This document shows positions 33,650 through 63,554 of a stretch of 64,000 bases of DNA, piece after piece. The position numbers were made by a program, and so were the translations under genes. Each line of letters begins with the position of its first letter. The stretch's first letter is position 1. Under the pieces are notes generated by a model that saw only the letters and a program-made list of their open reading frames with translations, did not search any database and was not told where the DNA came from. Source of the DNA: Anthoceros angustus (taxonomy: Eukaryota; Plantae; Anthocerotophyta). The DNA lies in contig MU008153.1 of NCBI GenBank assembly GCA_010909165.1, positions 806,001 through 870,000 of the forward strand, given 5' to 3'.

Positions 33650-36600
33650 CTAGGAGGTTTCCCCAACCACAAAACTATGCACCAGTCCCTCCATGTCTGT
33701 CCACCAGCTCTGGCCGGGCTGCTTCCATGCCCTGGTTCTCAACCTCGTTGCCTGCATTTCCTCTGCCCGCTGCCACATCTGGGCACCCGTGTATATGTTG
33801 GACATCAAACTATAGGCTGCGGCGTTTTTCTTGTCTAGCTTCACTGCTTCCTTGAAAGCCTGGAGTCCCACCTCCGCATTGTTCCACTTTCGACAAGCAC
33901 CCAATAGTGTGTGCCAAACTGCAGCATCAGGCTGTACAGGCATCGCCCTTATCAAACCTAGGGCTTCATCCAGTTGTCCAGCACGACCCAGAAGATCCAC
34001 CATGCATGTGTAGTGGTCCACCGTGGGAATGATGCCATTTTGTTTGCTCATAGCCTCAAAGCACTCTTGCGCCTTGCTCACCTGACCCGTATGACTGCAA
34101 ACTGTTAGTATACTGAGGAGTGTGACGCCATCCGGCCGTATGCCATCCTCTCTCATTCTAAGAACCAACTCGAAGACCTGTTTACTGTCTCCTTGCTGGG
34201 TGTATCCCGCAATCAGCGCATTCCAGGCACTAATGTCTCTTTTGGACAATTCCTCAAACACCTCCAATGCATCACCCATGCTACCGCACTTCCCATACAT
34301 GTTTATCAAACTGCCAGGTACAAGCTCGTCATCTTGCAACCCTTGTTGTTTAATCTGCGCATGGATCTGCCTTCCCAAAGGCAAAGCTGCCACATTCGCA
34401 CATGCCTGTAAGAGGCCCACAAATGTAACAGAATCAGGTGCAACAACGCCTTCCTGCTGCATAGACCTGTAGACACGGAGAGCTTCCTGCCCCATCCCCT
34501 GTTGGGAATATCCTGCAATCATGGCACTCCACATCACCACATCTTTCTGAGGAAGTCCATCAAACACTTCCTGCGCATCCTCCAGGCTGCCGCACTTTGC
34601 ATACATGTTTACCAAACTGCTGGCTACAAACACATCAGCCTCAAGTCCCTGGTCTCTTATTTCTGCATGAAGCTGCCTCCCCTTCTCCAGACCAGGAGTT
34701 CCCACACTTGCACACGCCTGCAGTAGGCATGCAAATGTCACAGAATTGGGTGTAACCACGCCTTCCTGCTGCATAGCCCCTGAAGAGCTTCCTGCCCCTG
34801 GCCCTGCTGAGAGTACCCTGCTATCATGGCACTCCACGTCACCACATCTTTCTGAGGAAGTCCATCAAACACACCTTGAGCCTTGTCTAAGCTGCCACAC
34901 TTTGCATACATGTTCACCAAGCTGTTGCCCACAAACACATCCGCCTCAAGCCCTTGCTCCTTGATCAGCGCATGAAGCTGCCTGCCCTTCTCCAAAGCCG
35001 AGGCACCCACACTCGCACATGCCTGCAGCAGGCTCACAAACGTCACAGAATCCAGTGCAACCTTGCATTCTTCTTGCATGGCCGTGTAAAGACAAAGGGC
35101 TTTCTGCCCCATGCCCTGCTGGGCATATCCTGCTATCATGGTGTTCCACATCACCACATTCTTTCGACTAAGTCCATCAAACACTCCGAGCATCCACCAG
35201 GCTCCCACACTTCGCATACATGTTCACCAGGCTCCCCTCACAACCACATCACCCTGAAGCCCCTGTTCTCTCATCTCCCCATGGAGCTCCTTCCCTTCTC
35301 CAAACCTGCAACCCCATACTCGCACATGCCTGCAGGAGGCACACAAACGTCACCGAGCTGGGTGCAACAACGCCTTCCTGCTGCATAGACCTGTAGACAC
35401 GGAGAGCTTCCTGCCCCATCCCCTGTTGGGAATATCCTGCAATCATGGCACTCCACATCACCACATCTTTCTGAGGAAGTCCATCAAACACTTCCTGCGC
35501 ATCCTCCAGGCTGCCGCACTTTGCATACATGTTTACCAAACTGCTGGCTACAAACACATCAGCCTCAAGTCCCTGGTCTCTTATTTCTGCATGAAGCTGC
35601 CTCCCCTTCTCCAGACCAGGAGTTCCCACACTTGCACACGCCTGCAGTAGGCATGCAAATGTCACAGAATTGGGTGTAACCACGCCTTCCCGCTGCATAG
35701 CCCCGTAGGCACGAAGAGCTTCCTGCCCCCGGCCCTGCTGAGAGTACCCTGCTATCATGGCACTCCACGTCACCACATCTTTCTGAGGAAGTCCATCAAA
35801 CACACCTTGAGCCTTGTCTAAGCTGCCACACTTTGCATACATGTTCACCAAGCTGTTGCCCACAAACACATCCGCCTCAAGCCCTTGCTCCTTGATCAGC
35901 GCATGAAGCTGCCTGCCCTTCTCCAAAGCCGAGGCACCCACACTCGCACATGCCTGCAGCAGGCTCACAAACGTCACAGAATCCAGTGCAACCTTGCATT
36001 CTTCTTGCATGGCCGTGTAAAGACAAAGGGCTTTCTGCCCCATGCCCTGCTGGGCATATCCTGCTATCATGGTGTTCCACATCACCACATTCTTTCGACT
36101 AAGTCCATCAAACACTCTCCGAGCATCCACCAGGCTCCCACACTTCGCATACATGTTCACCAGGCTCCCCCTCACAACCACATCACCCTGAAGCCCCCGT
36201 TCTCTCATCTCCCCATGGAGCTCCTTCCCCTTCTCCAAACCCGCAACCCCCATACTCGCACATGCCTGCAGGAGGCACACAAACGTCACCGAGCTGGGTG
36301 CAACAACGCCCTCTTCCCTCATAGCCTTGTAGACACCAAGAGCTTCTCGCCCCATGCCCTGCTGAGAATACCCTGCTATCATGGCATTCCACGTCACAAC
36401 ATTCTTCCTCTCCAGCCCATCAAACACTCTCTGAGCATCCTCCAAGCTCCCACATTTGGCATACATGTCCACCAGGCCACTGAAAACAAACAAATCAGGC
36501 TCAACTCCACTGGCCAAAACATCAGCATGCACCTCCTGCCCAGACCTCAAGTCTGCTCCCTTCGCACAGGCCTGAAGAGCTGCTACAAACACATGCCCGT

Positions 36601-37186
36601 TTGGCTTCACGCTCGACCTGCGCATCCCATGGTAGAGCTCCACGGCCTGCTTATCCTGCCCATGTTTCACATGAGCAGAAATTATGGCAGCCCATGTGAA
36701 GGCATCCGGCTTGGCAGCCATGGTGAACACACCCATGGCTTCCTGCAACCTGCCATGAAAAGCATACATCCGCAGAATGCGGTTGCACAAGAACGTATCC
36801 GACTCAAACCCTTTCTTCACGGTGAGAGCATGAACACGGCGACCTAGAGCCAGATCATGTCTGTCCACGCATTCCTTCATTGCAGCATAAATCACAGATT
36901 TTGAGACATGGCAGCCTGTGCCCACCAGAACTTCCAGGGCCTCCACGGCCTCACCGAGCTGCCCCTGGTCACATAGCTTCGTCACGGCATCCGCCGTTAC
37001 ACCGGGGTTGTGGAAACCGTCCATGGAAGATGGATATCCAGCTCCAGCCAGACATTCTATGGAGCGGGCAGGCATTCTAACAAAATCGGTGCACCACGCG
37101 GCTTTGCTGTTCGCGAGGCCCGGGTTGGTTGGAGTCAGGTGAGCAGAAACTCGCCCCCACGACGGGTCCTGGTGGCCAGCAGTCAT
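33650..37186 (-). CDS. PLS-class PPR RNA-editing factor with E1/E2 and a 'WW' PG-box; frameshifted in this assembly
   Basis: Repeated P-L-S triplets (DVVTWSAMIAGYSQQG / NSVTFACLLQAC / DVFVASSLVNMYAKCG), S2 HYTCMVDLLGRAG, E1 VWHTLLGAC, E2 AYSLMSNIY, then KQPGQSWWTDMEGLVHSFVVG and stop; split over ORFs 35249-37201, 34738-35217 and 33650-34837. Confidence 0.92.
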
Positions 37187-37394
37187 GGCTGCCAAGAGCA
37201 CCAGGAACTACCCGTCTGGCGGGAGTTCAGTGAAGCGACCAAACTCACGCTCTTTATTGATAAAATGTGACATAAGTTGCAAATCATGCACATGGGTCAA
37301 GGGAATCAAGAGAATGGGAGGCAGCAATGTGCACCTGGGTCTCTGAAAATTGAATCTACAGGGATGAACCTCGGATGGCTGCAGCTATCCACAG

Positions 37395-43645: not shown

Positions 43646-46600
43646 CTACTGTGGGCCAGCAGCAAGAATCTCTTCCGTGAGTTTGCTGTCCCCACCCACT
43701 TTGTAGTCGCTGAAGTTGGAGAAGTTCTTTTTAAACAGAGCAGCCAACTTGGTGAGGGTCTCCGTGTAAGCATTCTTGTCAGCCCACTGCAGCAGGCATG
43801 CAAAATTTCAGCATTTTCCCAGAGTCGAAAACGAAACAAAGGATTTTGTCCAAAATACGCTGCTTCGTTGGCATCTTGTGCCATAGAAACCAAAAGAAAG
43901 GGCTTTTGAAAGTACCAAGGAAAAGGAGCTCACCATATTCTCAGGGTGCAGTATCTCTGATGGCACTCCGTCAACTTTGTCAGGAACATATAGCCCGAAA
44001 ATGGGAGTCTGCGTGTAAGAAGACTTTAGCAGAGATCCATCGTGAATAGCATCAATGATCTTCCTGGTGTATGCCAGCTTCATGCGACGCCCAACTCCAT
44101 AGCTGAAGAAATGAAAAGGCATGGTTAGACATGTCTCGTATGGGTAGATTTCAAAGTGGCACCACAAGCATCGGGAAGGTAGATCACCTGCCACCAGACC
44201 AGCCGGTGTTCACCAGCCAGGCAGTAGCACCGTGCTTTTTCATCTTGTCAGCTAACATGGCCGCATACTTTGTGGGGTGCAGCATGATGAAGGCAGCACC
44301 AAAGCAAGCGGAGAAAGTTGCTTGAGGCTCTTTGATGCCTTCTTCTGTGCCGGCAACCTGCAAGAGCAGGCAGGAGTAGACACGGAATTGGTCACGATGT
44401 AGACTGAAACAGGGGACAGAAGGGTGTTGAAGGAGGTGGAGACGTGTACTCACCAAAGCAGTATAGCCACTGATGAAGTGGTACATAGTCTGGGCCATGG
44501 TGAGCTTGCTGACGGGAGGGAGAACCCCAAAGGCATCACATGCCAAAAGAATGACGTTCTTAGGATGGGGGCCAACACAAGGGATCTTGGCATTCGGAAT
44601 GAACTCGATAGGATAGGCAGCCCGTGTGTTCTCTGCGAGAGGACAACGCAAGGATCAAAGCAAGGCTCGAGCAGATGACATGAACAAGGAGGACATTCCA
44701 GAACAAACGCAGCATATATACCTGTGACTGATTTGTCACTGTAGTCCACCTCTCGTGTATGCTCATCGAAAACAACGTTCTCCAGAACTGCACACATGGG
44801 GGGAGGGGAAGCAGGAGTCTCAGAAAGGAATGTATGTAAGAATTTAATCAAACAGACGACATTTAACGTCGTCCTACCTGTCCCGAACTTGATGGCGTCG
44901 AAAATGTCGGGCTCTTTCTCCTGTGAGAGATCAATGGTCTTGGCGTAACATCCTCCCTCGATGTTAGAAACACCATTGTCCGACCAGCAATGTTCATCAT
45001 CTCCAATCAGAAGCCTGTTATGGTCAGTGGACAGCGTAGTCTTGCCAGTTCCTGCCACCCATACGAAACAACATGAACGAAGAGTTCGGGAGCTCAACCA
45101 GCACGGCAAGCATGTCACAATACAGTACCTGATAATCCAAAAAACAACGCCACATCCCCTAACTTCCCCTCATTGCAGCCAGAATGCAATGACAAAATCC
45201 CTCTTTTGGGCATCATATAGTGCATGAGGCCGAAGAGACCCTTCTTCATTTCTCCAGCATACTGTGTTCCAAGGATCACCATCTCTCTTCGTTTCAGGTT
45301 TATGTCTATGCTAGTTGAGGACGTCATGTAATGTGTGTAACGGTTGCAGGGGAATTGGCCTGCATTGTAAATAGTGAAGTCGGGAGTCCCAAAATCTTCG
45401 AGCTCTTCAGGTGTAGGACGAATACACCTGCCACCCATACTCACTTAATGCCAACCTCAACCCGCAGCAACCTCTGGTCACGGCCTCGAGAGGGCTCGAC
45501 AGACAGGGGTAGTTCTATTCTTCTCTTCCACACCGACTGACAACAGGACAGGATGAGGGGGCGCAGAGCTGCTTACATGTTGTACATGAAGAGCGAGTGG
45601 TAAGCCCGAGCTGATATGATCCTCACTTTGATCCGGTTCTGGGGATCCCAGTTCAAGAACTGGTCGTTCACGAACACCTGCAAATAGCCACCAAAAAGCA
45701 AGCATGTCACCAACTGCAACACACCCATTGCTCTAGGACAACAGGCAGACTTGCACGCACTAACCTTCTCCAAGGAGTTGAGGTAATCGACAGCCCGCTC
45801 CCTGTTCACCAGAAAAGTCTCCTCGTCCATTTCAATGTTCGGAGAGCCCCTACAGCAAACCACAAAAACTTGTCATCCATCGCCCTTTCAACAAAGGGTC
45901 ACCCCATGATTGGGTGCAGAGATATGTATACTCACTTGCCCCACCACAGATCATTCTTGGACGTCTCTTCGATCACAACACGCTTGTCCTTTGGCGAACG
46001 TCCAGTTTTCGCTCCAGAGAGCGTGGCCAATGCACCAGTGGAGGTGATGTACGATCCCTTCTCAAACTTGATGGCCTGCTCATACAGCTCTGCACATGGC
46101 AAGCTCAGCAGATTAGACAGCGTACAAAAAACCAACACACCACGAATCTTTGACTCGACCACAAAATGTGAGGGCTAGCTAGCTCTTCACCTGCGGGGGA
46201 CAAATTGTAGAGAACATGAGTGAACTTCAAGGCACTGTCACTGATGTTCGGCCTGGTAGGGACAGCACACTTATCAGCAGGCTTCCTCTTCTTCTCGGGA
46301 TCCCCCTTCACCAGCTGTGGCCCGGTCTCTCGAGTCAGGGAGGCAAGCGACGCACTGTAGAAACAAAAAGGACAACAACATCAGTAACCAATCAACAGAG
46401 CGGGAACAGGAAACCGAAAACAAAACAAAAAAACCGCCATCCGCTGAGAGATACAAATGCGTTCCACAAGCTGACTCCAGAAAGTTGGAAAAACAGCAGC
46501 ACCTGATGGACTGCAACTGCTGTCGCTTCCTCTCCTCGTCGGAGAGAAATGGGCTCTTAGTGGGTGTTCCCCGAGGGGTAGAGGGAGCCGATTTTTTCTT

Positions 46601-46771
46601 CTGGAGCGAATGCAGCTCGTCCAGAGTCTTAGCCCGGACAGGGGTGGTGCTGTCATCGGTGCACACATCGCCCTTGTTGCTCACGGTCTTGATCTTGGAC
46701 AAGCCGTTGGGAATACCATTCCCGCTCATCTCGTGAGCCACACCGTTCTGAGAAATACCGTTCTGAGCCAT
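43646..46771 (-). CDS. PCK1: Phosphoenolpyruvate carboxykinase (ATP), multi-exon
   Basis: [101 protein letters not shown]; last exon needs a +1 base in a G-run to give [12 protein letters not shown]. Confidence 0.96.
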
Positions 46772-47416
46772 CCTCGCTGCTCCCAAAAAAACCGGCACCT
46801 GCAAATCACCCCATTACCAACCCACAAAAACTGCAAGCTTCAGAAAACAACCCACAATTCCATCCACCACCGAGAAGCCGAGAACCGCGAAACCCAACAC
46901 TCACCGAGCGCTGGAGCTGCCCAGAAGAACGGGAACGCAGAAGCGGTGGTGTCGGGCGGCTCACTGGCCAGACAACTCACTTCTCCAGCCTGAAAATTAC
47001 TCCCTCTCCCGCAAGAGACCATGAAATGAGGCTCTCTCTCCCACAGAAATTATTTCTTCATCCAGAACCCACACGGACAGCGAGGAGCGAGCGGGGAATC
47101 AGCAGCGCCGGGAGCGAGCCCAGCAGCAGCGAAGTAGGAGACGAGAAAAGGCCAGCCGGTGGTGAAGCCGAAGCCGAAGCCAAAGCCGCCGCCCAACACC
47201 AGATCTGCAACAGGAGCAAGAAGCGGCACAATTCTGCTGCGGACCCCGGGAAATCAGCGAGTGCACGCGGAATCAGCACCGGAATCGGAGGCTGGGCTGG
47301 TGCCCACAACGGGAACTCGAGGCAGAAAGGAAACGCGATCCTTGCCTCCCGGGAGACAGGCGATCACGAAAACACCGAGGCCGAAGACGAGAGAGGAATG
47401 CAACACCTTCGCCCGC

Positions 47417-50539: not shown

Positions 50540-52602
50540 CTACAGACTAGCGGCAGCCACCTTGATTTGGGAGATGTCGATGAGGCCGAAGATGGTGTCG
50601 TCCAGGATGGATTTAATGGCTGCCTTCGCTACCTCATCCACACTGACGGGAGGGGCTAGCAACAGGTCCGAGCCGGGTATGGAAGAGAGAGGCTTCAGGA
50701 ACTTCTCCGTGCTGTCCAGCAGCTTTTCAAGCGGCCCACCAATGAGGTTGAGGGGGATATCCACACCGTTTACCCGCCTCTTGCCGTAGATGAAACCTGG
50801 TTGGAGGATGACTCCTAGCCCAGCACAAAGGACAACAACATCAGCAGTGACCTCAGTACCCGAGATGGGCCGGTTCTGTCAACGCACACGTGGATGACAA
50901 TTCAGCTGGGCAAACTCACCATTTCCAGGGAACTTGGAAAGGATGGCTTCCTCGGTTCGTCTTTTCCCCTTGAAGTAACCGTTGTTGAGAGCAAACTCCG
51001 GCAGATTATAGCGGTGTACAGAGACGTAGACAAATTTCGCCACACCTGTTAACAACAAGTGCATACCCCCAATCAGTCTACCGATTCGGACAACCTGGAA
51101 TTCTTACATTACTGCATTACTGAGGAGTAAGGTCCTCACCTGCCTTGCTTGCAGCCTCAACTGCAGCAATGTTGGCATCACCATTGATTCTCTGCATTTG
51201 CTCGTTGGACCCGAAGGCGCCAATACATGAGATCACTCCAGTGACGCCTTGGAGGAGTTCATTCCAGTTAGCGTTGAAGACATCACCTGCACGGTAGCCA
51301 CCGGTGAGATGGAAAACAAACCCTACCATCCTCCTTCAAGCCATATTTCACAACGGACGACTATGCAAGCCTTGACATGCCTGCCAGGATGTGCAACGTG
51401 CAACGATGAGTGATTCAAGACACCCAACGGAGGTGATGACTTGCCTGACACCCATGACACCTGCTCCACCCATGGTTCGGTATACCCGGGCCGTCCAGAT
51501 CTGCATTTGCAATTTCTCAAAATCACATCCTGTTAGGCCGTGTGAGCCGGCATAGGCAATAGATGTAGATCAATAAGCTAAAACATATACCTGTTAAGGC
51601 TCACTACGTCAAGGCCCTGCTCAATTCCGATCCTGCTCACCCGGGAGCCTACGAAACCATTGCCTCCCAATACCAAAATCTGCAATGGCATGCAGAATTA
51701 AAAATAATAGAGCTTCTCTTCCTCATCCTTTCTGTCTTCGTAGTGTGTACAGCAAATTTACTGGAGTTGCCGCTACATCTTCATAGCTTTTCTTCTTCGT
51801 CTTCTTTGATGGTGACAGCAAATTTACTGGAAGCCAAATCATGTGCAGTGGAAACAAAGATGATGCAAAGCGCACCTTCTGTGTCTTCACTTCTGCCTCC
51901 ACATCAATTGGAGCAGCGACGGAAGCTGGTTCAGTTCCTGATGAATAGGAGCAGCTTACTGTCCTCCTAAACAACCAAGCCAGTCGCTCAGTCTCAAACC
52001 CGCAAACAATCAGGAAGTACCGTTCCATACCATTCTCACATCGTACACGCTCGAGTTCCTTCATTAATTTCCGGAATCCAAGAAGAATTCAAGAAAAACA
52101 TCCACAATCCCTGTTATCAGACTGCAGGATTCACGAAGCTGGAACTCACATCCGAAACCTAAAATTCAACTCAGCACCAATACACTCTTAAAATAAAGAA
52201 GAAAGAATCCTTGATCCTCCACACAATTCTCATCACACAAGCACAGAGCGGCAGTCCGACATGCATGCAGCACGGATCTCCCTCAAAGCTCATCTACGCT
52301 CACCAAAGTCCAAAGACAGAAAATGAGGATCGCGAAAAGAGAAACCAGAAGCTCACAAATCCTACCATACACCTGTGACTTCAGGGGAGAGGCTACCAGG
52401 TGGGACCTGATTGCAGCCGGTTGGAGCTCCTGCCATGGCTCAGGCTTTTTCTGTACACCAGAGTCACGAAATTGCGGCTGGCGAAGCCGCGAACGGAAGC
52501 CTGATGGAAGAAACTGGCGGCGGAGGTGCTGGCAGCTCGGCCGACGAAGGAATGCCAGACACACAAGGAAGAAGACGCCGCTCGAGCTGCGCCGGACGCC
52601 AT
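50540..52602 (-). CDS. NAD(P)-binding Rossmann-fold protein, At1g32220-like, with a putative organellar transit peptide
   Basis: ILVLGGNGFVGSRV, SGRPGYTEPWVEQVSWVSG, VISCIGAFGSNEQMQRINGDANIAAV, FVYVSVH..GYFKGKRRTEE, GFIYGKR..IPLNLIGGPL, PPVSVDEVA; N-terminal exon boundaries less certain. Confidence 0.88.
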
Positions 52603-52769
52603 GGCCACAAGATCTTCTGGCTCTTGTTATCCGAAGGCGACAAGTATACAAGTATACGAGGCAACCTTTCGCCACAGGGCAAAACTGCCTCGTCGTATGT
52701 CCACTTCACGCTGCTGTGACTGGCCGAGTATGTATCCATGTACCCGCCTTGAAAACGGGCAACGTGGGC

Positions 52770-55700
52770 ATGGAAGTTGTGCGTTCGGGTGATATGTATG
52801 CATCTGTGCCCGGATCGAGGAATTCCTGGATGGGGAAGGCGGGAGGGATGTTGTCTAGGGTTCATCTGGGCAAGATTTGCTGAAGAAAGTTTGGAGCGGT
52901 TTGGCATTCTGGGAGCAAGATGCAGTCGGATTCGTATAAGCAGCTCTGCCAGAGTCTGCTGGAGCTGCAGAGTGCTGCAGATACTATCTTCGATGTCATC
53001 ACTGACAGGGTAAGATCCGGGGTTTGTTGTTGGGCGGGAGATGCAGTATCTGAGGCGATTTAGGAGCGGGTAGGTGAGATTGTGTGGTGGTGGAAGGGTG
53101 CCCATGTTGGAGAAGAGCTGTGTCTTTTTTGTGGGCGGTTCACGGAATGAGGGGATATTGTGCAGGTTGTGGCAGAGCAGCATGCTGTGAAGAAAGTGTC
53201 GAGAAGAATTAAATCAGCCCGGGTAATTCTTGCCTGGAGATGGAATTCTGGGCTCATGGCATCGTGCTTGGTTTCAGGAACTTGCATTGAAGGTGCCTTT
53301 GGTGGTGGCAGAGCAAGTTGGACACGATTGCTGGGAGCAAGCGGGCTATAACCATGTTTTCAAGTGCCAAGTACCCTGCTGTTGCTCCGGAGCAGGCAGA
53401 TTTTGCTCCCTTGTTTGGTGGAAACAAAGCAGGTGATCACAAAATGCTGCCTGCTGTCAGCATGAACCTGACGACGGTATCAGGGCAGGTATTTTTGCAC
53501 ATATCCAATCCTGTTGGACGTCTGTTTTCCTTGTCAGCAGCATGTTGGGCAACATGACAACGGACGATGCTGTTCATGTTCCAGGAGAACGGGGATCAAG
53601 GTGCTCTAGAGCTTTTTCGGTTTTTCTTGGAGACTAGTCATGAGTGCTGGCCGACTTACCGGAAGCCGAAGGTAACAGACCAAGGGCGTGGAGTTTGGCT
53701 TTTCAGGACCTGAAATTTGTGTGCTCAATGCCTGCTCTACCTCACCAGGAAGGAATCGGTGGAGTACCACCCCATGTTAAGTCGGTGGCAGATATCATGC
53801 TGTTCAACTCCACCGAGCTTCCTTATCACAAGTGGGTAGATCTACTGGAAATTTGTCGTTAGCGGAGCATGCAAAGATGGTTCTCATTCCGCTTGGTCGA
53901 ATGATTCAGGTATAGGGTGGTGGACAACCTCGCTGGTGCAGATCAGCCGGTTCAGGAGGAGGCTCAAAGCCAACCAGCCTTACCAGCTCCTCCTCAAAGT
54001 GTTCTTCATGGAGGCTCCATGGTAAGTATGCTAGCTCTGCTGGTGCATGCAATCAGTGTATATCTTGTTTTCGTCGGCCTTGGTCAACAGCAACAGCAGC
54101 AGTGGAAATGTTTAGAGATTCATTCAGGACGACTCCTTTGCAGCATGCAGCTGGGATCGATCAGTATGGCTTCAAGCCCACTGTTCGGCAGGTCCCGTCT
54201 TTCAGCCTTCCTCCCATTCTGCCTGACCTGCCGATGGTCGCAGACATAAGCTGGACTGGTACGAAGCGCCCCTGGTCTCTGCAGATGCAGATGAATGCAA
54301 ATTATAGGCACCCAATGCGATTCTTGACATTAATGAGTGCTTCCACCAGGTTCTCAAAGTGGGATGGATGACGGTCCATCGATAGCGCCATCAGCAGCTC
54401 AGAGTGGCTCCTCACCCAGAAAAGCTGGTACCCGATGGTTCTTGGTTTCTGGGCCCTTTGCCATTGGTCGTTGGTGTTTCTGGCAACCCTGAGGTTAGCA
54501 GGGGTGTTGCAGGTTCAATGAAAAGCTTTGTTACAACATCATCCAGATCATTCAGGACTGCGTCAAGGGGTCCAGCCAGGCCTGTCAAACCCCTGGATCC
54601 ACAACAAGGAACCAGTGCTCCTAGAGGTGAGCAGCAAGCGATACATTCCGAGTTCTGGATCAGCTTCTGCATGTGTTGTGGCGATGCATCTCCTTGGCAC
54701 TGATCTGCTGTTGTCTCAGCAGCTGAGGATTTATTTGCACGACAGTCCGAGGACAAATCGCCACACCAGCAAGAGAATGGGAAGCAGGAAAAAGTGCAAC
54801 CAGCTCCACCTCCTCCACCTCCATTGCCTCCTCCCTTGCCTCCCTTATCAGTCCGGTCATCCCCTGTAAAACCAGCTGACAAAGCTGGTAGCTCTGATAC
54901 TCCACGAGAGACTGGCCATCCTAGCAGGAATGTGCTCACGTCAGGGAAGTCCAGACAATCTGAGAGTGCTTTGGCTTCAGCTCCTGTGGTACCTGCCCTT
55001 GGTAAGAATTGGAGTTTCTCTGGCATTTGCTGTGTGGGATCTACAACTTTCAGCCAACCCCAAATAAATCGAGGCTGCGTGGACTTGCAGATACTCAGCG
55101 TGCAGCACTCATGGCTTCAATCCGCTCACCTGGCATCAAGCTGCGTAAGGTACATCTCATACATGAATGAAAGTGAGAATCTGTTGGGTTCCTCGGTGGG
55201 CTAATTTGTCGCTGAGCTTTGCAGACTGGACCCACAAAGGATTTGTCAGCCTCTTCAGAGAAGCTTGTGACATCAACCAAACAAAGCTCAGGGTCCCGAG
55301 CTTCAGACAAGGAAGGCCCTTCATCATCTCAGACTCAGGTTATCATGGCAGGACACCATTCCAGCTGGTCGTGTTGATGATCAACCAATTTGGCGAACTA
55401 AAGCTGTTCACATGTCCTTTGCAGCCTGTCGATGTCCTCGCCGAGATGGCTTCCAGCTTGAAAATGCGAAGGCTGGCAATGAAAGGTGCCAGCCATGACA
55501 AGGTATCTAGTCATGACATGGATCCTCAACCGGATTCACTCTAGAAATAGCTGAACAACTGGAGACCTCTTGTGCAAACCAGGTGTAACTACTAGTGCCC
55601 ATTCTGTGCAGCCTGTGATCAAGGCAGTCCAGGAAGAAAGCTCGGTGGAGCCTAAGAAGTCAAGTGAAGCCGGCAGGTTTGATCCTCACTAGCTTGGGAA

Positions 55701-55973
55701 CTGGGCTGCTCTTGGATGACTGTGAATTGCCTTCAACGTCATTTGAATAACAGAACCTGTGGTTTGGTATTGGTGGCGGACACCACGACCCGCAGTGGAA
55801 CTTTCACTCTTCCGGTGAGCAACATTATCAAACTCAAGCTCTATTGTTTACAACAAGTTTGTGGTTTCAAGCAATTGAAATTCTTCCCTGTGTGGATCCA
55901 GATCACAAAGCTACATGCTTACATTGCACGGAAGAATGCAGAGCTAAGCGATGACGACGAGTGGGGGGAATGA
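52770..55973 (+). CDS. WASHC1: WASH complex subunit 1 (WASP-family Arp2/3 nucleation-promoting factor), ~14 exons
   Basis: WAHD: LCQSLLELQSAADTIFDVI, KLDTIAGSKRAITMFSSAKYP, GIGGVPPHVKSVADIMLFNSTELPYHKYRVVDNLAG, YGFKPTVRQVPSFSLPPILPDLP, PSIAPS; poly-Pro; WH2 RAALMASIRSPGIKLRK (55091-55149); C DVLAEMASSLKMRRLAM (55425-55502); A ELSDDDEWGE*; splice phases consistent; start either 52770 or 52920. Confidence 0.9.
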
Positions 55974-57120
55974 GTTTCGTGCCCTAGGAGGTTTGCTTGA
56001 TATGCTTCGGATTGTCTGGTTTCTGATTCAGCAGGCCCCACAACTACAACAGTTCCAACATCATTTGTCCTGTTAGCATCTTCGTCTTCCACTGTCACTT
56101 CCGTCGGAAGATGCGCGCTAACCTCACGTCCCGTGAGAGGACTGGCTAGGTCGGTGGCCGGTGGCCGGTCGGCTCTATAACTAATGATCGTCTACTCAAA
56201 TAACCCACATTCTCTTCTCTGCTACTTTGGTCGTGCAGCATGTCTACCTAGTCCGTCTGCTTTGACCTAACTGTAAACCCTAAACCCTGGAGCTGAGGGA
56301 GAAAGCTTCACAATGCCTGGAGATGTGGCCCCAGATGCAAACGCTTTCTTTGATGCTGTCGTGTTTCAAATGCAAAATCTTGAGTCCGCCGACTCTTGCC
56401 ATACAAGATACTGGCGCAGTGTGTCAAATGTGTTCCGTGATGTTGAAATATGTTCGCATCCTCAGGCTGTAAAAACCCTTAGAACCCTGCAGATGACATG
56501 TAAAACAGAGTTTCGTGGGGAGCGTGTTGTCCTGAGTGCTTACCGGGCGATGCTGCGGAACTGTGTAGCAAATTCTCAAGCTCTTTTGCAACAGGAAGTG
56601 CCCCGTCTTAGCCTTATTGTCGGATTTGATATATAGGGATAGGGATCTACACTGGGGATCGGCAGGGCATCCAGTTCACACGAGGACGTGATCAACAGCT
56701 GGGAACTGACACCGCTTTGGATTTGGCACTTTCTGGTTCACGATCTACAGCAGGGGGGCCTTGTGAAGCCTGTGGTGTAACTGGAGATTGTCATGGAATG
56801 GTGCTGTCGTGCCTCAACTGTTTCTTGCCAGGATTTCCACTGTACCGGGTTTGAGTATGAAACTAGCGTTCCTGTATCCCTAGCAAAGACACGTGGGGGA
56901 ACATGCACCCTTGCAGTGTCAGATCCTCCCGAGCTAGTGCTTCACAGAGCCTAGTACTTGTTTAACAACGGGTATCGGATGCTTATCACATCTTCAGGAA
57001 CAACTGTGAGGACTTCGCCATTTATTCTAAGACTGGACTGCTCGTCAGTCAAAGGAGTGTGATGGGACGAAGTGGACAGGCGGCATCCATACTTGGGGCC
57101 CCTTTTGCTCCAGCTTCATT

Positions 57121-57369: not shown

Positions 57370-57900
57370 TTATGAGAGTGCACCTACCGGCCCTTCTGCT
57401 GAGGCATTCGCAAGGCAGGCGAAAGAAAAAGCGTTAGCTTCAAGCTGAACCTCTTGCTTATGTAGTCCGTACAGCACCAATGTCTCTTGGCCGAGCCCTA
57501 GTGGCGCATACCCAATAATCAATGTCTCTTGGCCGAGCACTAGTTGTGCATGCCCAACAATCACATGACCAATGTCGAGCCCTAGTTGTGCATACCCAAC
57601 AATCACAGCACCACTGTCTCTTGGCCGAGCACTAGTTGTGCATGCCCAACAATCACATGATCAATGTCGAGCCCTAGTAGTGCATACCCAACAATCACAG
57701 CACCAATGTCTCTTGGCCAAGCACTAGTTGTGCATACCCAATTACAATCAGCATTGTTGATGTCTCGGCATCTACGAATCTAAATCTGTGATAAAATGTC
57801 CTGCCAAATCCGCTGCTCCGTTTAATACTACATTAGGCTCATACCTGAAGACCTCTAAAAAGATTCTCTTCCCCGAGGTTGTGTCACTCCTGCTCAACAA
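57370..57900 (-). pseudogene. PPR relic in which half of a P motif has become a minisatellite
   Basis: IVGYAQLGL / IVGHAQLVLGQETL repeats (57480-57750), then GLGQETLVLYGLHKQEVQLEANAFSFACLANAS. Confidence 0.7.
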
Positions 57901-59385
57901 CTTGCAATGAATGGCATAGGACAACTTTTTAGACGTCGCAGTGTGTACAATAGTTGTTGCCATGTTGATAGGTTATTGCAGGCCAGCCCTGTCTTATCCA
58001 AGTTTTCAAGGATCCCAGGAGTTAGCTGAAAACTTTTAACTTGGGCTGTGTGTAACTTTGGCTAGGAAGGCGGTTATATTGGACTGCTTAATGCAAAATG
58101 AGTGAAGCATTAGTGTACATGAAGGGCTGATGCCCAAACCTTGTGTGCTCGTAACGGTATGAAGGGCTGATGCTCAACACTAAAAGAATAAGGGTGCTTT
58201 TACAATGCATGTTACAATGCCATTTAGAAAGGGTTTTAATCACATGTTGTAAATCAGGGCATTGTAGTGGATGCGTCCAAAACAGTTAGGAGGCGTGTAG
58301 TTTGTCCAGCCTGAAATCATAGATTATGAGCCATTTCAGATAGTCCCTAGAGGTTCGGGTTCAGGGTTGGGTACAAAGCACTATGCCACATCATTGGGTG
58401 CACCATGTCAGCGTGCCACATCACTGTGGCCTTGGCACATTAGCATTTCTAGATATGCCGCATTTGCAATGCGTATTTTAAAACAATATTTACAAACCAG
58501 GGAGCAACGCACTTAACAAAGCGTCATCACAAGCAAGTTACAAGGGGAATAACGTTAAATTTAACATCGGGAATAGTGTGGGTTACCATACCGTGGTTAA
58601 TAAACCAGAGTTGGGCTAACTAGAGTATACTAATCATGGTTACCTAACCAGAGTTACTTAACTTGGATGCATAGTTGATCACGTTGTTCTTCGCGGTGGC
58701 TAGGTGCGCTGTAAATTTGGATAAATAAATATTTTATAATATATAATTTATATAAAAATAAATATACTAATTATCAAAAATATAATTGTAGACCCAAATA
58801 TTTTGAATATTAACATCTAGGGTTTCAGGGTCTAGTTTTACACCGGGAAATAACTGCCGACGGTGTCAAAACACTAAATATGCAGAAGCGAGAGATCTCG
58901 TGAACTAAAACCTCAAAGCTAAAAGATCTACGTGACTAGTGCAACTACAGTTCCAAGATTGGAAATAGCAAACCATAAACCTCATCTGGGTGCACCCCGA
59001 AATACCAAAACTCTGTGCATCTACTGATCGGGTTAAACAATGTCCCCATAGCCACATCGCCGCCTTCTACACAAACAAAGAAACTGAGTGCTTGACAGAC
59101 GATAGCATTTCAAAAGCACAAGGTAATTAATTGATCTTACCATCTATGAAGTGCTTTGACATGCCTACACTGCCCGGATAGGTAACAAAACTCATAGAAT
59201 GTATGAAATTCAAGCTTCTGCACCATTAATAGTCCCTGCAGACCACACACTGCAAGATCAATGCACTGAAATGGAGTGTCAAATCAAGAGCTGCGATGAA
59301 AGCAAAAAAGAAGCATGCGTGCAGGACATGCCCCACCACTAGGCTTATGCACCCCCTGGGCAAGTTCTTCAGCCTACGCTACAGT

Positions 59386-62300
59386 CACATGTGGTTCCCT
59401 CGCCAATTCCACGTAGGTCAAACATCAGGTAGCATATGGTTCACAAGGAAGCCATCATCCACCACTTGTTTGTGCAGGGTGGCCTTCATAACCTTCATGT
59501 CCACTATATCCAATGCAAGGCCAGATTTGGTGTACTTTTTCCACAAAACTGATGCCTTCATCATTTTACCTGAGGTGTCATGTAGCGAACCCTCCTCCTG
59601 CACAAGCATATTCTTCCCTTTTCCAAAATCATCGAGCTTTCTGTGCCAGCTTCTTTTGCGCGTTCTAACAACCTCTTCCTCTCTTGAACCGGCCATAAAA
59701 TTGCCTCATGACGGCCACAAGACCCCCAAATGCCGAGATGGGAATAAGGCTTGGCCACCGTAGCATTCTTCCTTTCCCGAGCACACTGCATCTGCTGACT
59801 TTCAGGGACCTCATGTGCCAACTTCTTCCTCTCAACCTCCAACAATAATTCCAATTACTTGGAATCCACTGTCTTGTTCACATATTGCCCACCTTTCTTA
59901 GAAGACAAAAGTCCCTAGCACTCCTAACAGTGTTATACTTCCACCAACATACCATCTTAGTCATAATCTGATCAACAATTTTGTTCATGTTCCAAGGCCC
60001 ACCAATCTCTACCTTGACAGTTGACTTAACCAACCTTTTAGTCACGTCCAGCTCCATCCAATAATTTCCAATGATTAGATTCATGAATTTGCACATAACC
60101 TAGTGCATCCTCCTCTTTAGCCTTCTGTGTGATGGGTCTCTTCTACAACTCAACCTGCACAAAAGGACGCGACATCAAGTCAATCCATGGACGAAAAAAT
60201 CACCAATAATAAAGACTGGACTTAGTGCAAATAATATCATGAGATCTTCACTAAGTCTTCCCAGCTGTTCTCTACCTTGCCGTTGTCAACTCCCTCCGCC
60301 ATACCCTCCTTCAGTAGAGCTGCAATAGTCGAGGACTGTTGGGCAAGACGTATCGCCTCCCGCTGCTCTTTCAGCCACTTGCTGATCCTATTGCGCTTCA
60401 CTCCTTCATGCGCAGAGACGGGAGCTTCCTTGGGAGCAGCCCAGGGCCTCAAGCCATACCAACTCCTTCTTCAACGGCCCCGACGCCCGATTCCTCATCG
60501 ATTGTCGGCTCGATCCACCTCCCCGCGCCCTCTTGCTCGATCCGCTTGTCGCTGCCATCATTCTCAATCCGCTTCGTGATTAGGGCATGATCCACTTGCT
60601 GCCCCAGCGCAGATCTTGTTCATGTTGCCGCCTGCTCGATCGGGTTCGCCGCCGCCTTCTCGGTCCCGACCGCTACCTCCGCGACCGCATGGTTGCAGAG
60701 GGGTGTCGGCCAAAGATCATCACCGCACTACCGCTACCTAGGATGGCCATGGATGCGGCTTTGCCACCGGGAGGCGATCCATTAGTCTCTTCGATGAGCG
60801 GACTCGCCGGCTCGTCATTGTGAATATTATGCGATCCAATGTCATGCACATCCGCACCCATCTCGGCCGATGTCGGCTTCTTCCTTCCTCTTGAAGACTT
60901 CCTTGGTTGAGGAGTTGATCTTACCGCAACCCTTTTGGCGCCCTTCTACCCTTTTACTTCCCACTTCTCTTGCAAGTTCTCTACTCCATCACCCAAGACG
61001 GCCTATGCCGCCACATACCTACTCTCCACAACCACCCCCATGGCCACTCCACATGTGGTTCCTCGCCAATTCCACGTAGGTCAAACATCGTAGCATATGG
61101 TTCACCATCATCCACCACTTGTTTGTGCAGGTGGCCTTCATAACCTTCATGTCCACTATATCCAATGCAAGGCCGATTGGTGTACTTTTTCCACAAACCG
61201 ATGCCTTCATCATTTTACCTCGAGGTGTCTTAACCCTCCTCCCCGCACAAGCATATTCTTCCCTTTTCCAAAATCATCGAGCTTTCTGTGCCAACTTCTT
61301 TTGCGCGTTCTAACAACCTCTTCCTCTCTTGAACCGGCCATAAAATTGCCTCATGACGGCCACAAGACCCCCAAATGCCGAGATGGGAATAAGGCTTGGC
61401 CACCGTAGCATTCTTCCTTTCCCGAGCACACTGCATCTGCTGACTTTCAGGGACCTCATGTGCCAACTTCTTCCTCTCAACCTCCAACAATAATTCCAAT
61501 TACTTGGAATCCACTGTCTTGTTCACATATTGCCCACCTTTCTTAGAAGACAAAAGTCCCTAGCACTCCTAACAGTGTTATACTTCCACCAACATACCAT
61601 CTTAGTCATAATCTGATCAACAATTTTGTTCATGTTCCAAGGCCCACCAATCTCTACCTTGACAGTTGACTTAACCAACCTTTTAGTCACGTCCAGCTCC
61701 ATCCAATAATTTCCAATGATTAGATTCATGAATTTGCACATAACCTAGTGCATCCTCCTCTTTAGCCTTCTGTGTGATGGGTCTCTTCTACAACTCAACC
61801 TGCACAAAAGGACGCGACATCAAGTCAATCCATGGACGAAAAAATCACCAATAATAAAGACTGGACTTAGTGCAAATAATATCATGAGATCTTCACTAAG
61901 TCTTCCCAGCTGTTCTCTACCTTGCCGTTGTCAACTCCCTCCGCCATACCCTCCTTCGAGCTGCAATAGTCGAGGACTGTTGGGCAAGACGTATCGCCTC
62001 CCGCTGCTCTTTCAGCCACTTGCTGATCCTATTGCGCTTCACTCCTTCATGCGCAGAGACGGGAGCTTCCTTGGGAGCAGCCCCGAGGGCCTCAACTGTC
62101 ATACCAACTCCTTCTTCAACGGCCCTGCACGCCCCTGATTCCTCATCGATTGTCGTGCCTGATCCACCTCCTGCGGCCCTCTTGCTCGATCCGTTTGCTG
62201 TTGCCATCATTCTCAATCCGCTTGCTGCATTCGCTGGGCATGATCCACTTGCTGCCCCCGCAGCGCAGGATCTTGTTCATGTTGCCGCCGTGCTCGATCG

Positions 62301-62733
62301 GGTTGCTGTCGCCGCCTTCTCTGGTCCCGGACCGCTACCTCCTGCGACCGCATGGTTGCAGAGGGGTGTCGGGCCAGCATCATCAGCCTGCACCAGCTCT
62401 GCTACCTAGGATGGCCATGGATGCGGCTTTGCCAGCTGGGAGGCAGTCCACATTAGTCTCTTCGATGAGCGGACTCCTGTCGGCTCGTCATTGTGAATAT
62501 TGTACGATCCAATGTCATGCACATCTGCAGACCCATCTCGGCCGATGTCGGCTTCTTCCTTCCTCTTGAAGACTTCCTTGGTTGAGGAGTTGATCTTACC
62601 GCAACCCTTTTTGGGCGCCCCTTCTTACCCTTTTTTACTTCCCACTTCTCTTGCAAGTTCTCTACTCCATCACCCAGCACGGCCTATGCCGCCGCCACAT
62701 ACCTACTCTCCACAACCACCCCCATGGCCACTC
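59386..62733 (-). mobile_element. Decayed, probably LINE-derived sequence, tandemly duplicated (59386-61048 and 61049-62733)
   Basis: Duplication is directly visible (offset ~1645-1665); SREEEVVRTRKRSWHRKLDD...LVQEEGSLHDTSGKMMKASV resembles the L1 endonuclease-RT linker; the LINE call is weak. Confidence 0.45.
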
Positions 62734-63554
62734 CCTGATGTGATTCACTGCCGACTGCAGTGTTGATTGCGGACTTCCCAGACAATATTCTTGCTGTTGC
62801 AAGCTTCCTGGTGTCTTTGTCGGGCTCACGATGGAACACCAGCGACTGGACATGCACAAGCTTCTTCCCCCTATGAGGCATCTAAGAACCAAGGTGGTTG
62901 TGGTCAGTAGGTGTGTTGAAGGTGGAGCCATGGTCAAGGCCAAAGCGCTAGTGTCGTAGCAACTCCAAAACTAAGTCAGTCTCTCTAACTCCCTGGCAGC
63001 GACGTCACGCTCTACCGTATGTTGTAGATGTGCGGAAAACAAGGCTGTAAATGGGGGAGTTTACCTCAACAATGGGGCTGACGAAGCGGTTACTAAAGTA
63101 CTTGGGAAAGAGCGTGTTCGGCAGCAAATGACCTCAGCCAAGTTCTCATGCACAGAAAACGGGATGACGTTACACGGGACACCCACGGCTGCACACCCTA
63201 GCGTCACTTTGTCAGCACGATGAACTGCAGCCTGTTCTGCACTAGAGAGCAATGTGAACCATGGTACCTTGTGACTTACTCCAGCGGCACCCAAGTCGAG
63301 GATGCCTGCAACAACCGAATGCCAGATACTTCACCGGATAAACAGTGGGGCTAAAAAGAGGCATTTGCATGGTTCAAACGGCTTCCTTTATCCAAGCGGC
63401 GAACCAAATAGCCTGGAATTTCCCGCCCATCATGCCCCTATTAATCCCGCCCAATGCCTGAAAATCGCCGCAAACGATTCTCCCTGATTGCACCTAAATT
63501 CCTTGCGCCCAAATTGCCAAACGCTTGCAAAGTTCAAGCTCATTTGGTTACCCT

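What the first reader, a model, noticed from the sequence alone, without database searches (positions are those of the whole stretch)
52770..55973. A complete WASH1 Arp2/3 activator in a land plant
All WASH1 modules are present in order with consistent splice phases: WAHD (FSSAKYP; LFNSTE..Y..YRVVDNLAG; VP....P..LPDLP; PSIAPS), poly-Pro, WH2, central helix and acidic DDDEW end. Arabidopsis has only SCAR/WAVE-type activators, and WASH is commonly treated as lost from flowering plants. In animals and amoebae WASH builds endosomal actin with retromer. An intact gene implies a second, endosomal Arp2/3 pathway in this lineage that has had little or no functional study. It may already be auto-annotated in bryophyte genomes.
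Basis: partly seen in the sequence, partly recalled or inferred. Interest (0 to 1): 0.8.

Follow-up and report, generated by a model that had tools for sequence, protein, structure and literature searches.

The report
Expressed WASH gene in a hornwort-like plant
This is a real, intact and transcribed plant gene for WASH, a protein that switches on branched actin growth at endosomes in animals and amoebae; such genes were already reported in mosses, lycophytes and conifers, so it is a sound but ordinary orthologue of a family that nobody has yet studied functionally in plants.

Summary
Window 52920-55973 (+) carries a 16-exon, all GT-AG gene encoding a 532-aa WASH protein. It has a WAHD domain, a poly-proline stretch, a WH2 motif, a central helix and an acidic DDDEW tail.

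Spliced transcript contigs from the same organism match exons 1-14 to the base. A relative about 92% identical confirms every junction. These contigs corrected two of my splice sites.

Three exons hit Pfam WASH_WAHD colinearly. The spliced protein scores 603 bits against a profile of 20 land-plant WASH proteins.

Flanking PLS-class PPR genes, and relatives that are all land plants, support a plant origin. The lineage is probably a hornwort, which I did not verify.

The novelty claim does not hold. WASH in Physcomitrella, Selaginella and Picea was published in 2010-2012. RefSeq names the moss and Selaginella orthologues "WASH complex subunit 1".

Still open: whether the four partner subunits exist here, and what plant WASH does. 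One small point I found undescribed is a second conserved helix between the C helix and the acidic tail in land-plant WASH. This scan had no earlier WASH note on this genome.

The parts
52692..52919 (+).
   Evidence: RNA contig of run X2 starts at 52692 and runs unbroken into exon 1. uATG count and the in-frame stop come.
52920..53009 (+). Exon 1, aa 1-30: start codon and first part of the long N-terminal helix (QLCQSLLELQSAADTIFDVITDR)
   Evidence: Junction 53009/53166 confirmed by the arithmetic of the X2 contig and by X20. The helix is predicted at pLDDT about 90 in the closest relative.
53166..53222 (+). Exon 2, aa 31-49: rest of the N-terminal helix
   Evidence: Joint 53222/53312 seen in X2 and X20.
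53312..53488 (+). Exon 3, aa 50-108: WAHD core (FSSAKYP, DFAPLFGG)
   Evidence: Pfam WASH_WAHD E 1.8e-5, 24.8 bits, above the 24.2 cut-off, profile positions 64-104. The donor at 53488 was set by RNA contigs.
53585..53671 (+). Exon 4, aa 109-137: WAHD block ALELFRFFLETSHE
   Evidence: Joints seen. The block is nearly invariant in 20 plant WASH proteins.
53749..53831 (+). Exon 5, aa 138-165: WAHD block SVADIMLFNSTELPYHK
   Evidence: Pfam WASH_WAHD E 0.0033, profile positions 148-173. Joints seen.
53910..54021 (+). Exon 6, aa 165-202: YRVVDNLAG and LPAPPQSVL
54144..54258 (+). Exon 7, aa 203-241: YGFKPTVRQVPSFSLPPILPDLPMVADISW
   Evidence: Pfam WASH_WAHD E 0.042, profile positions 220-248. Joints seen.
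54350..54427 (+). Exon 8, aa 241-267: PSIAPS motif, end of the conserved N-terminal half
54513..54626 (+). Exon 9, aa 267-305: Ser/Arg-rich variable linker
   Evidence: Poorly conserved, and listed amino-acid changes in the relative cluster here.
54723..55001 (+). Exon 10, aa 305-398: poly-proline tract (PAPPPPPPLPPPLPPL) and variable linker; NAGNAG acceptor with the distal AG used
   Evidence: RNA contigs of X2 and X20 join 54626 to 54723. The relative has only in-frame indels here (a 15-nt deletion; +2 and +1 nt insertions).
55091..55149 (+). Exon 11, aa 398-417: WH2 (V) motif DTQRAALMASIRSPGIKLRK
   Evidence: Pfam WH2 E 7e-4, 19.6 bits, below the 23.1 cut-off. The plant WASH profile matches the N-WASP WH2 of 3m3n at E 3.1e-5 and WAVE1 of 3p8c.
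55225..55338 (+). Exon 12, aa 418-455: Ser-rich linker between V and C
55425..55502 (+). Exon 13, aa 456-481: central (C) amphipathic helix VDVLAEMASSLKMRRLAMKG
   Evidence: Nearly invariant in land-plant WASH (E, M, RR, M, G). Predicted helical in the relative.
55612..55676 (+). Exon 14, aa 482-503: spacer
   Evidence: The X2 contig ends exactly at this exon's end: 228 + 1508 = 1736 nt.
55796..55814 (+). Exon 15, 19 nt, aa 503-509: GTFTLP, start of the second conserved C-terminal element
   Evidence: Both junctions are seen only in the relative's contig (X20). GT-AG and phase fit.
55902..55973 (+). Exon 16, aa 510-532 plus stop: helix ITKLHAYIARKNAE and acidic tail LSDDDEWGE
   Evidence: An X2 contig covers 55901 onwards into the 3' UTR.

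Best explanation
Window 52920-55973 (+) is the single-locus orthologue of WASH (WASHC1) in a non-seed land plant, probably a hornwort. The gene is intact, spliced and transcribed. By homology, the protein should work like WASH elsewhere. Its long N-terminal helix and WAHD would anchor it in a regulatory complex (strumpellin, SWIP, FAM21, CCDC53 in animals and Dictyostelium). The proline tract would recruit profilin-actin. The WH2 motif would bind an actin monomer. The C helix and the acidic tryptophan tail would bind and activate Arp2/3, building branched actin on endosomal membranes. Shown here: gene structure, expression, family membership, the presence and order of all modules, and conservation of those modules across land plants. 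Inferred, not shown: complex assembly, Arp2/3 activation and endosomal location.
For: Gene model: 16 exons, all GT-AG, 532 aa, with an upstream in-frame stop. Expression: a 1736-nt intron-less contig from run X2 (same sample as DNA run X1, which keeps the introns) equals the 228-nt leader plus exons 1-14 to the base. A 2268-nt contig from a relative (X20) carries all 15 junctions. Family: WASH_WAHD hits on exons 3, 5 and 7 at colinear profile positions, with exon 3 alone above the gathering score. No other family domain hit at E<=10. The protein scores 602.9 bits end to end against 20 plant WASH proteins, versus at most 2.6 for shuffles. It is 64% identical to P0026, which hits WASH_WAHD at 5.8e-32; all 8 aligned plant relatives hit WAHD and 4 of 8 hit WH2. 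WH2. Constraint: among the substitutions listed for the relative, changes in the WAHD and the C-terminus are mostly synonymous, amino-acid changes cluster in the linker, and the coding-exon indels listed are all in frame (this is a partial list). Plant origin: neighbouring PLS-class PPR genes with an E motif whose relatives are all land plants. All named WASH relatives are liverwort, moss, lycophyte, fern, gymnosperm or Chara.
Against: No biochemical or cell-biological evidence exists for any plant WASH in the literature I could search. The partner subunits could not be sought from one 64-kb window, and no note on them exists in this scan. A 2013 review states that no plant other than Ostreococcus had been reported with all five subunits (PMC3689024). 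In land-plant WASH the canonical C helix lies about 45 residues from the acidic tail, with a second helix between them. To my recollection this differs from animal WASH, so the activation geometry may differ. The WH2 Pfam score is below the curated cut-off. The junctions of exon 15 are supported only by the relative's RNA.
Confidence: 0.85

Rival explanations
1. An orphan or repurposed WASH. The gene is kept and expressed, but the canonical pentameric complex is incomplete or absent in this lineage. The protein then acts alone or with plant-specific partners, for example through the second C-terminal helix, rather than in retromer-linked endosomal sorting.
For: PMC3689024 says no land plant had been reported with the full subunit set. 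Seed plants lost WASH and COMMD proteins while keeping CCDC22/93 and a retriever core (PMC11397296; PMC10187114), so the pathway is evolutionarily labile in plants. A land-plant-wide extra helix lies between C and A.
Against: The N-terminal helix, which in other organisms contacts partner subunits, is the most strongly conserved and most confidently predicted part of plant WASH. That is hard to explain without conserved partners. A strumpellin homologue is annotated even in Amborella (cited in PMC4824794). The GO term 'WASH complex' is enriched in charophyte plus embryophyte gene sets (PMC6566377).
Confidence: 0.1
2. A decaying or non-functional gene, like the WASH fragments of grasses, that merely still looks intact.
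For: WASH has been lost repeatedly in plants, with N-terminal fragments remaining in Sorghum, Oryza, Phoenix and Setaria (PMC3298513). The 5' leader carries 8 upstream ATGs that could depress translation.
Against: The reading frame is full length with all modules. Transcripts are spliced in two species. The relative has only in-frame indels. Substitutions in the conserved modules are mostly synonymous. Identity to another member of the lineage is 64%, with all blocks kept.
Confidence: 0.03
3. Contaminant: the contig comes from an amoeba, oomycete or animal associated with the plant sample.
For: None beyond the general risk in bryophyte cultures.
Against: The same window holds PLS-class PPR and E-motif genes whose relatives are all land plants. 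All named WASH relatives found are streptophytes; two Logan-only relatives (P0026, P0047) carry no organism label, P0047 being only 25% identical to the relative P0026. Intron size and GC are uniform across the window.
Confidence: 0.02

Closest known systems
Physcomitrium (Physcomitrella) patens WASH, RefSeq 'WASH complex subunit 1-like' (cluster of P0036; XP_024402992 and isoforms), reported by Kollmar et al. 2012
   Same: Same module order: N-terminal helix, WAHD blocks, poly-Pro, WH2, C helix, spacer, second helix (ITLPIKNLHDYIA) and acidic DDDDWEE tail. Same family by Pfam.
   Different: Roughly 40-45% identity by analogy with the other moss, Ceratodon; not measured directly. It belongs to a different land-plant lineage, and the moss protein is longer (about 600 aa) in the variable linker.
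Selaginella moellendorffii 'WASH complex subunit 1 isoform X1' (P0044) and the Riccia, Calypogeia, Marchantia paleacea, Ceratodon, Sphagnum, Psilotum, Diphasiastrum, Ginkgo and Taxus orthologues
   Same: Orthologous family. All hit PF11945, and the WAHD, WH2 and C blocks are conserved.
   Different: Identity is 40-45% for the eight relatives aligned (the other orthologues named here were not aligned to the window protein). Some database models are truncated or mispredicted at the C-terminus (Selaginella, Sphagnum, Taxus). Riccia has largely lost the second helix.
P0026, unnamed 562-aa protein from a transcript contig of run SRR33208242
   Same: Nearest relative: 64% identity over 517 columns. 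It forms a clade with the window protein (94/98 support) and has the same C-terminus, KFSLPIAKLHAYIAQKNAELSDGDDWED.
   Different: A different species with no name in any source. It has a longer proline region.
Animal and Dictyostelium WASH (WASHC1), the Arp2/3 activator of the endosomal WASH regulatory complex
   Same: WAHD domain (the Pfam model is built on these), poly-Pro, and V, C and A elements ending in an acidic tryptophan motif.
   Different: Function is demonstrated there and not here. From my recollection of the human sequence (not tested with a tool), the acidic tail follows the C helix directly, whereas land-plant WASH inserts about 45 residues with a second conserved helix. No solved structure of a WAHD was found by sequence.
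Plant SCAR/WAVE, the only Arp2/3 activator studied in plants
   Same: A WASP-family nucleation-promoting factor with a C-terminal WH2 and acidic module. The plant WASH profile matches the WAVE1 WH2 region in 3p8c.
   Different: The N-terminal domain differs (SCAR homology domain versus WAHD). No SCAR-type domain was detected here.

Membership tests
WASH (WASHC1) family of WASP-type nucleation-promoting factors | N-terminal WAHD domain (Pfam PF11945) | tested here: met
   Exons 3, 5 and 7 hit WASH_WAHD at colinear profile positions 64-104, 148-173 and 220-248, and exon 3 alone exceeds the gathering score. The spliced protein scores 603 bits against 20 plant proteins that all carry PF11945. The whole spliced protein could not be submitted to Pfam because it has no reference.
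WASH (WASHC1) family of WASP-type nucleation-promoting factors | Proline-rich region between the WAHD and the VCA | tested here: met
   PAPPPPPPLPPPLPPL in exon 10, aligned with the poly-Pro of all relatives.
WASH (WASHC1) family of WASP-type nucleation-promoting factors | WH2 (V) actin-monomer-binding motif | tested here: inconclusive
   The window ORF holding exon 11 hits Pfam WH2 at E 7e-4, but 19.6 bits is below the 23.1 cut-off. The plant WASH profile matches the N-WASP WH2 at E 3.1e-5, and 4 of 8 relatives hit Pfam WH2 at E<=0.01 (best E 5.6e-4). The sequence fits the pattern (RAALMASIR..G..LRK).
WASH (WASHC1) family of WASP-type nucleation-promoting factors | Central amphipathic helix (C) and acidic tail with a conserved tryptophan (A) | tested here: met
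   VLAEMASSLKMRRLAMKG and LSDDDEWGE are read directly. Both are conserved across land plants, and the C helix is predicted helical in the relative. They are separated by about 45 residues.
WASH (WASHC1) family of WASP-type nucleation-promoting factors | Activates Arp2/3-dependent actin nucleation | not testable with these tools
   Needs a pyrene-actin assay.
WASH regulatory complex (SHRC) | Co-occurrence and assembly with strumpellin, SWIP, FAM21 and CCDC53 | not testable with these tools
   Only one 64-kb window is available. No partner gene lies in it, and the scan has no note on one. No tool supplied a partner sequence to use as a query.
Expressed protein-coding gene (not a pseudogene) | Intact frame and spliced transcripts | tested here: met
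   The intron-less contigs come from a run of the same sample whose DNA run retains the introns.
SCAR/WAVE family | N-terminal SCAR/WAVE homology domain | tested here: not met
   No such Pfam hit on any exon at E<=10, nor on 8 full-length relatives at E<=0.01.

The most novel reading that the evidence does not exclude
Non-seed land plants, including this hornwort-like lineage, keep a working WASH-dependent and SCAR-independent Arp2/3 pathway on endosomes that seed plants or angiosperms later lost. Land-plant WASH would use a modified activation module: V, then C, then a spacer, then a second conserved helix (FTLPIxNLHAYIA), then A. I found no description of that second helix.
Probability: 0.45. 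Interest if true: 0.5.

Novelty: new member of a known kind. Interest (0 to 1): 0.25.

Why it matters
Plant cell biology treats SCAR/WAVE as the only activator of Arp2/3, because Arabidopsis has nothing else. Bryophytes, lycophytes, ferns and gymnosperms keep WASH, and bryophytes keep parts of the Commander recycling machinery (PMC10187114). An endosomal actin pathway may therefore have been ancestral to land plants and lost later. This locus adds a cleanly validated, RNA-supported gene model for one more deep land-plant lineage. It offers a target for knock-out in a transformable hornwort, moss or liverwort. It does not change what is known about the family's distribution.

Tried and rejected
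1. PDB sequence search with exon 3 found nothing. The plant profile matched only WH2 regions of other proteins, so no WAHD structure was found by sequence.

2. Rfam on the whole window gave no match.

3. I tried to name the species through the neighbouring 650-aa PPR ORF. It had thousands of land-plant hits but none above 53% identity, so it supports 'land plant' and gives no species. The Atlas search gave only 'Streptophyta'.

4. The maximum-likelihood tree of WASH proteins resolved only two groups: window plus P0026, and the liverwort pair. It cannot place the lineage.

5. The AlphaFold model of the nearest relative had mean pLDDT 50, with only the helices confident. I therefore ran no fold search, which would have been meaningless.

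6. Four literature searches for a functional study of plant WASH found none. The Derivery & Gautreau conservation paper is not in the searchable library.

7. The spliced 532-aa protein has no reference, so I did not send it to the database tools. I used exon references and local HMMER or BLAST instead.

8. I considered and rejected the long antisense ORFs (52464-53183 and 54412-55026, minus strand) as genes. They run across exons and introns of a spliced plus-strand transcript.
Full report

Reading window 52400-56400 and joining the open frames at GT-AG sites gave a 16-exon gene on the plus strand. It runs from the ATG at 52920 to the stop at 55971-55973. The first usable start is therefore 52920, which also aligns with the N-termini of relatives.

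**Expression and splicing**

One DNA run (X1) holds 87% of the sampled words of the locus. A second run from the same sample (X2) holds 39%, about the exonic share.

Laying both runs, plus two runs from relatives, showed that X1 contigs keep the introns. X2 has a 1736-nt contig that starts at 52692 and skips the introns. Its length equals the 228-nt leader plus exons 1-14 (1508 nt) exactly.

The contigs corrected two of my junctions:
- Exon 3 ends at 53488, which adds VSGQ.
- Exon 10 starts at 54723, the distal AG of a CAGCAG acceptor, which removes one alanine.

The corrected product is 532 aa. A 2268-nt contig from a relative about 92% identical (X20) carries all 15 junctions, including the two around the 19-nt exon 15. 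X2 does not show those two junctions in the rows printed.

The relative's indels inside coding exons are in frame: a 15-nt deletion, and insertions of +2 and +1 nt three bases apart. I classified the 26 coding substitutions that the tool listed, which is a partial list. Twelve are synonymous and 14 are not. Twelve of the 14 fall in the variable linker (aa 279-387), and the other two are at aa 18 and aa 179. Changes in the WAHD and the C-terminus are mostly synonymous.

The gene is therefore transcribed, correctly spliced and under constraint.

**Family membership**

The spliced protein has no reference, so I scanned exon translations.
- Exon 3 hits Pfam WASH_WAHD at E 1.8e-5 (24.8 bits; gathering score 24.2; profile positions 64-104).
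- Exon 5 hits at E 0.0033 (positions 148-173).
- Exon 7 hits at E 0.042 (positions 220-248).
- The hits are colinear. No other family domain hit; exon 10 gave only chance-level matches at E>1.

A full HMMER scan of 1.84 billion representatives with exon 3 found 16 proteins. Their clusters include:
- Riccia fluitans and Ceratodon purpureus ('WASH1 WAHD domain-containing protein');
- Calypogeia, Psilotum, Selaginella and Chara;
- an unnamed 562-aa transcript product, P0026.

The window protein is 64% identical to P0026 and 40-45% identical to the others, with the same blocks throughout. All eight aligned relatives hit WASH_WAHD (best E 3.4e-36) and four hit WH2.

A word-index search with that alignment added:
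- Marchantia paleacea, Sphagnum, Ginkgo, Taxus and Diphasiastrum;
- Selaginella 'WASH complex subunit 1 isoform X1';
- a cluster that contains Physcomitrium 'WASH complex subunit 1-like' isoforms.

None of the 11 hits that carry an organism name is an angiosperm (the other 11 are unnamed). That search sees only proteins of 309-983 aa, so it says nothing about short fragments.

An HMM built from 20 of these proteins scores the window protein at 602.9 bits in a single end-to-end domain. The best of 200 shuffles scores 2.6 bits.

**The C-terminal activation module**

The ORF containing exon 11 hits Pfam WH2 at E 7e-4, below the curated cut-off. The plant profile matches the WH2 repeats of N-WASP (3m3n, E 3.1e-5) and WAVE1 (3p8c).

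The C helix (VLAEMASSLKMRRLAMKG) and the acidic DDDEW tail are conserved across land plants.

Between them lie about 45 residues that contain a second conserved element, FTLPIxNLHAYIAxKNEE. I saw it in the hornwort-like pair, mosses, Calypogeia, Marchantia paleacea (weaker), a fern, Diphasiastrum (weaker) and Ginkgo. It is largely lost in Riccia.

In the AlphaFold model of P0026, helices are predicted at four places: the N-terminus (7-62, pLDDT about 90), the WH2 (433-443), the C helix (486-501) and this second element (541-553). The rest is low confidence, as expected for a protein that folds only with partners.

The WASH section of Kollmar et al. does not mention this element. I did not compare it with animal sequences using a tool.

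**Origin of the contig**

The window also holds intron-less PLS-class PPR ORFs, one with an E motif, and a PEPCK gene. The PPR ORF's nearest Atlas clusters are Streptophyta. Its sequence relatives are lycophyte, fern, gymnosperm, moss, liverwort and a few angiosperm proteins at 32-53% identity.

In the WASH tree the window protein groups only with P0026 (94/98 support), apart from the liverwort pair. Everything else is unresolved.

Earlier notes of this scan call the genome a hornwort. That fits the roughly 50% GC, the 75-156-nt introns and the roughly 100-Mb contig sets, but I did not verify it. A contaminant origin is effectively excluded.

**What was already known**

- Kollmar et al. 2012 report WASH in Physcomitrella, Selaginella and Ostreococcus, a full-length Picea cDNA, fragments in Pinus and Cycas, and N-terminal remnants in some monocots. 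They infer loss in eudicots (PMC3298513).
- A 2013 review repeats this, citing Veltman & Insall 2010. It notes that no plant other than Ostreococcus had been reported with all five complex subunits (PMC3689024).
- Healy et al. 2023 note that Arabidopsis lost Commander while Physcomitrium keeps part of it (PMC10187114).
- A strumpellin homologue is annotated in Amborella (cited in PMC4824794).
- I found no functional study of a plant WASH.

**Verdict**

The gene is a new orthologue, in one more land-plant lineage, of a family whose presence in non-flowering plants has been published for over a decade and is auto-annotated. The functional inference of an endosomal Arp2/3 pathway is plausible and untested, and it cannot be advanced from a single window. 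Interest is low to modest. The only small new point is the conserved second helix in the activation module of land-plant WASH.

Noticed in passing
window 33653-37201 (-): Two intron-less PLS-class PPR ORFs lie 410 nt apart on the same strand: 650 aa, and 395 aa with an E motif. Relatives of the first are 900-1130 aa long, so this may be one editing-factor gene split by a stop or frameshift.
   Followed up: partly
window 52692-52919 (+): The WASH 5' leader carries 8 upstream ATGs, including a 37-codon uORF from 52770 in the frame of the main ORF. This may mean translational control.
   Followed up: partly
window 52500-52692: A separate, much deeper transcript contig (depth 116) ends at 52617, and the WASH transcript contig begins at 52692. 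A minus-strand ATG lies at 52608. This could be a head-to-head gene pair sharing a promoter of about 75 bp.
   Followed up: no
window 54717-54725 (+): Exon 10 has a NAGNAG tandem acceptor (CAG|CAG). RNA contigs of this species and of a relative both use the distal AG, and no sign of the proximal form was seen.
   Followed up: partly
window 55796-55973 (+); P0012, P0021, P0024, P0026, P0035: Land-plant WASH proteins share a second conserved helix (FTLPIxNLHAYIA) between the canonical C helix and the acidic tryptophan tail. It is not mentioned in the WASH section of Kollmar et al. 2012.
   Followed up: partly
window 59300-62900: A tandem duplication of about 1.64 kb at 97-99% identity, with duplicated short ORFs. 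In addition, a 42/50-nt tandem array lies at 57471-57710.
   Followed up: partly
window 44400-46800 (-): Exons of an ATP-dependent phosphoenolpyruvate carboxykinase gene (Pfam PEPCK_ATP, E 1.9e-35 on one exon ORF).
   Followed up: no
window 56334-56399: Contigs of three runs match only this short stretch and then diverge on both sides. That suggests a short dispersed repeat just downstream of the WASH 3' end.
   Followed up: no
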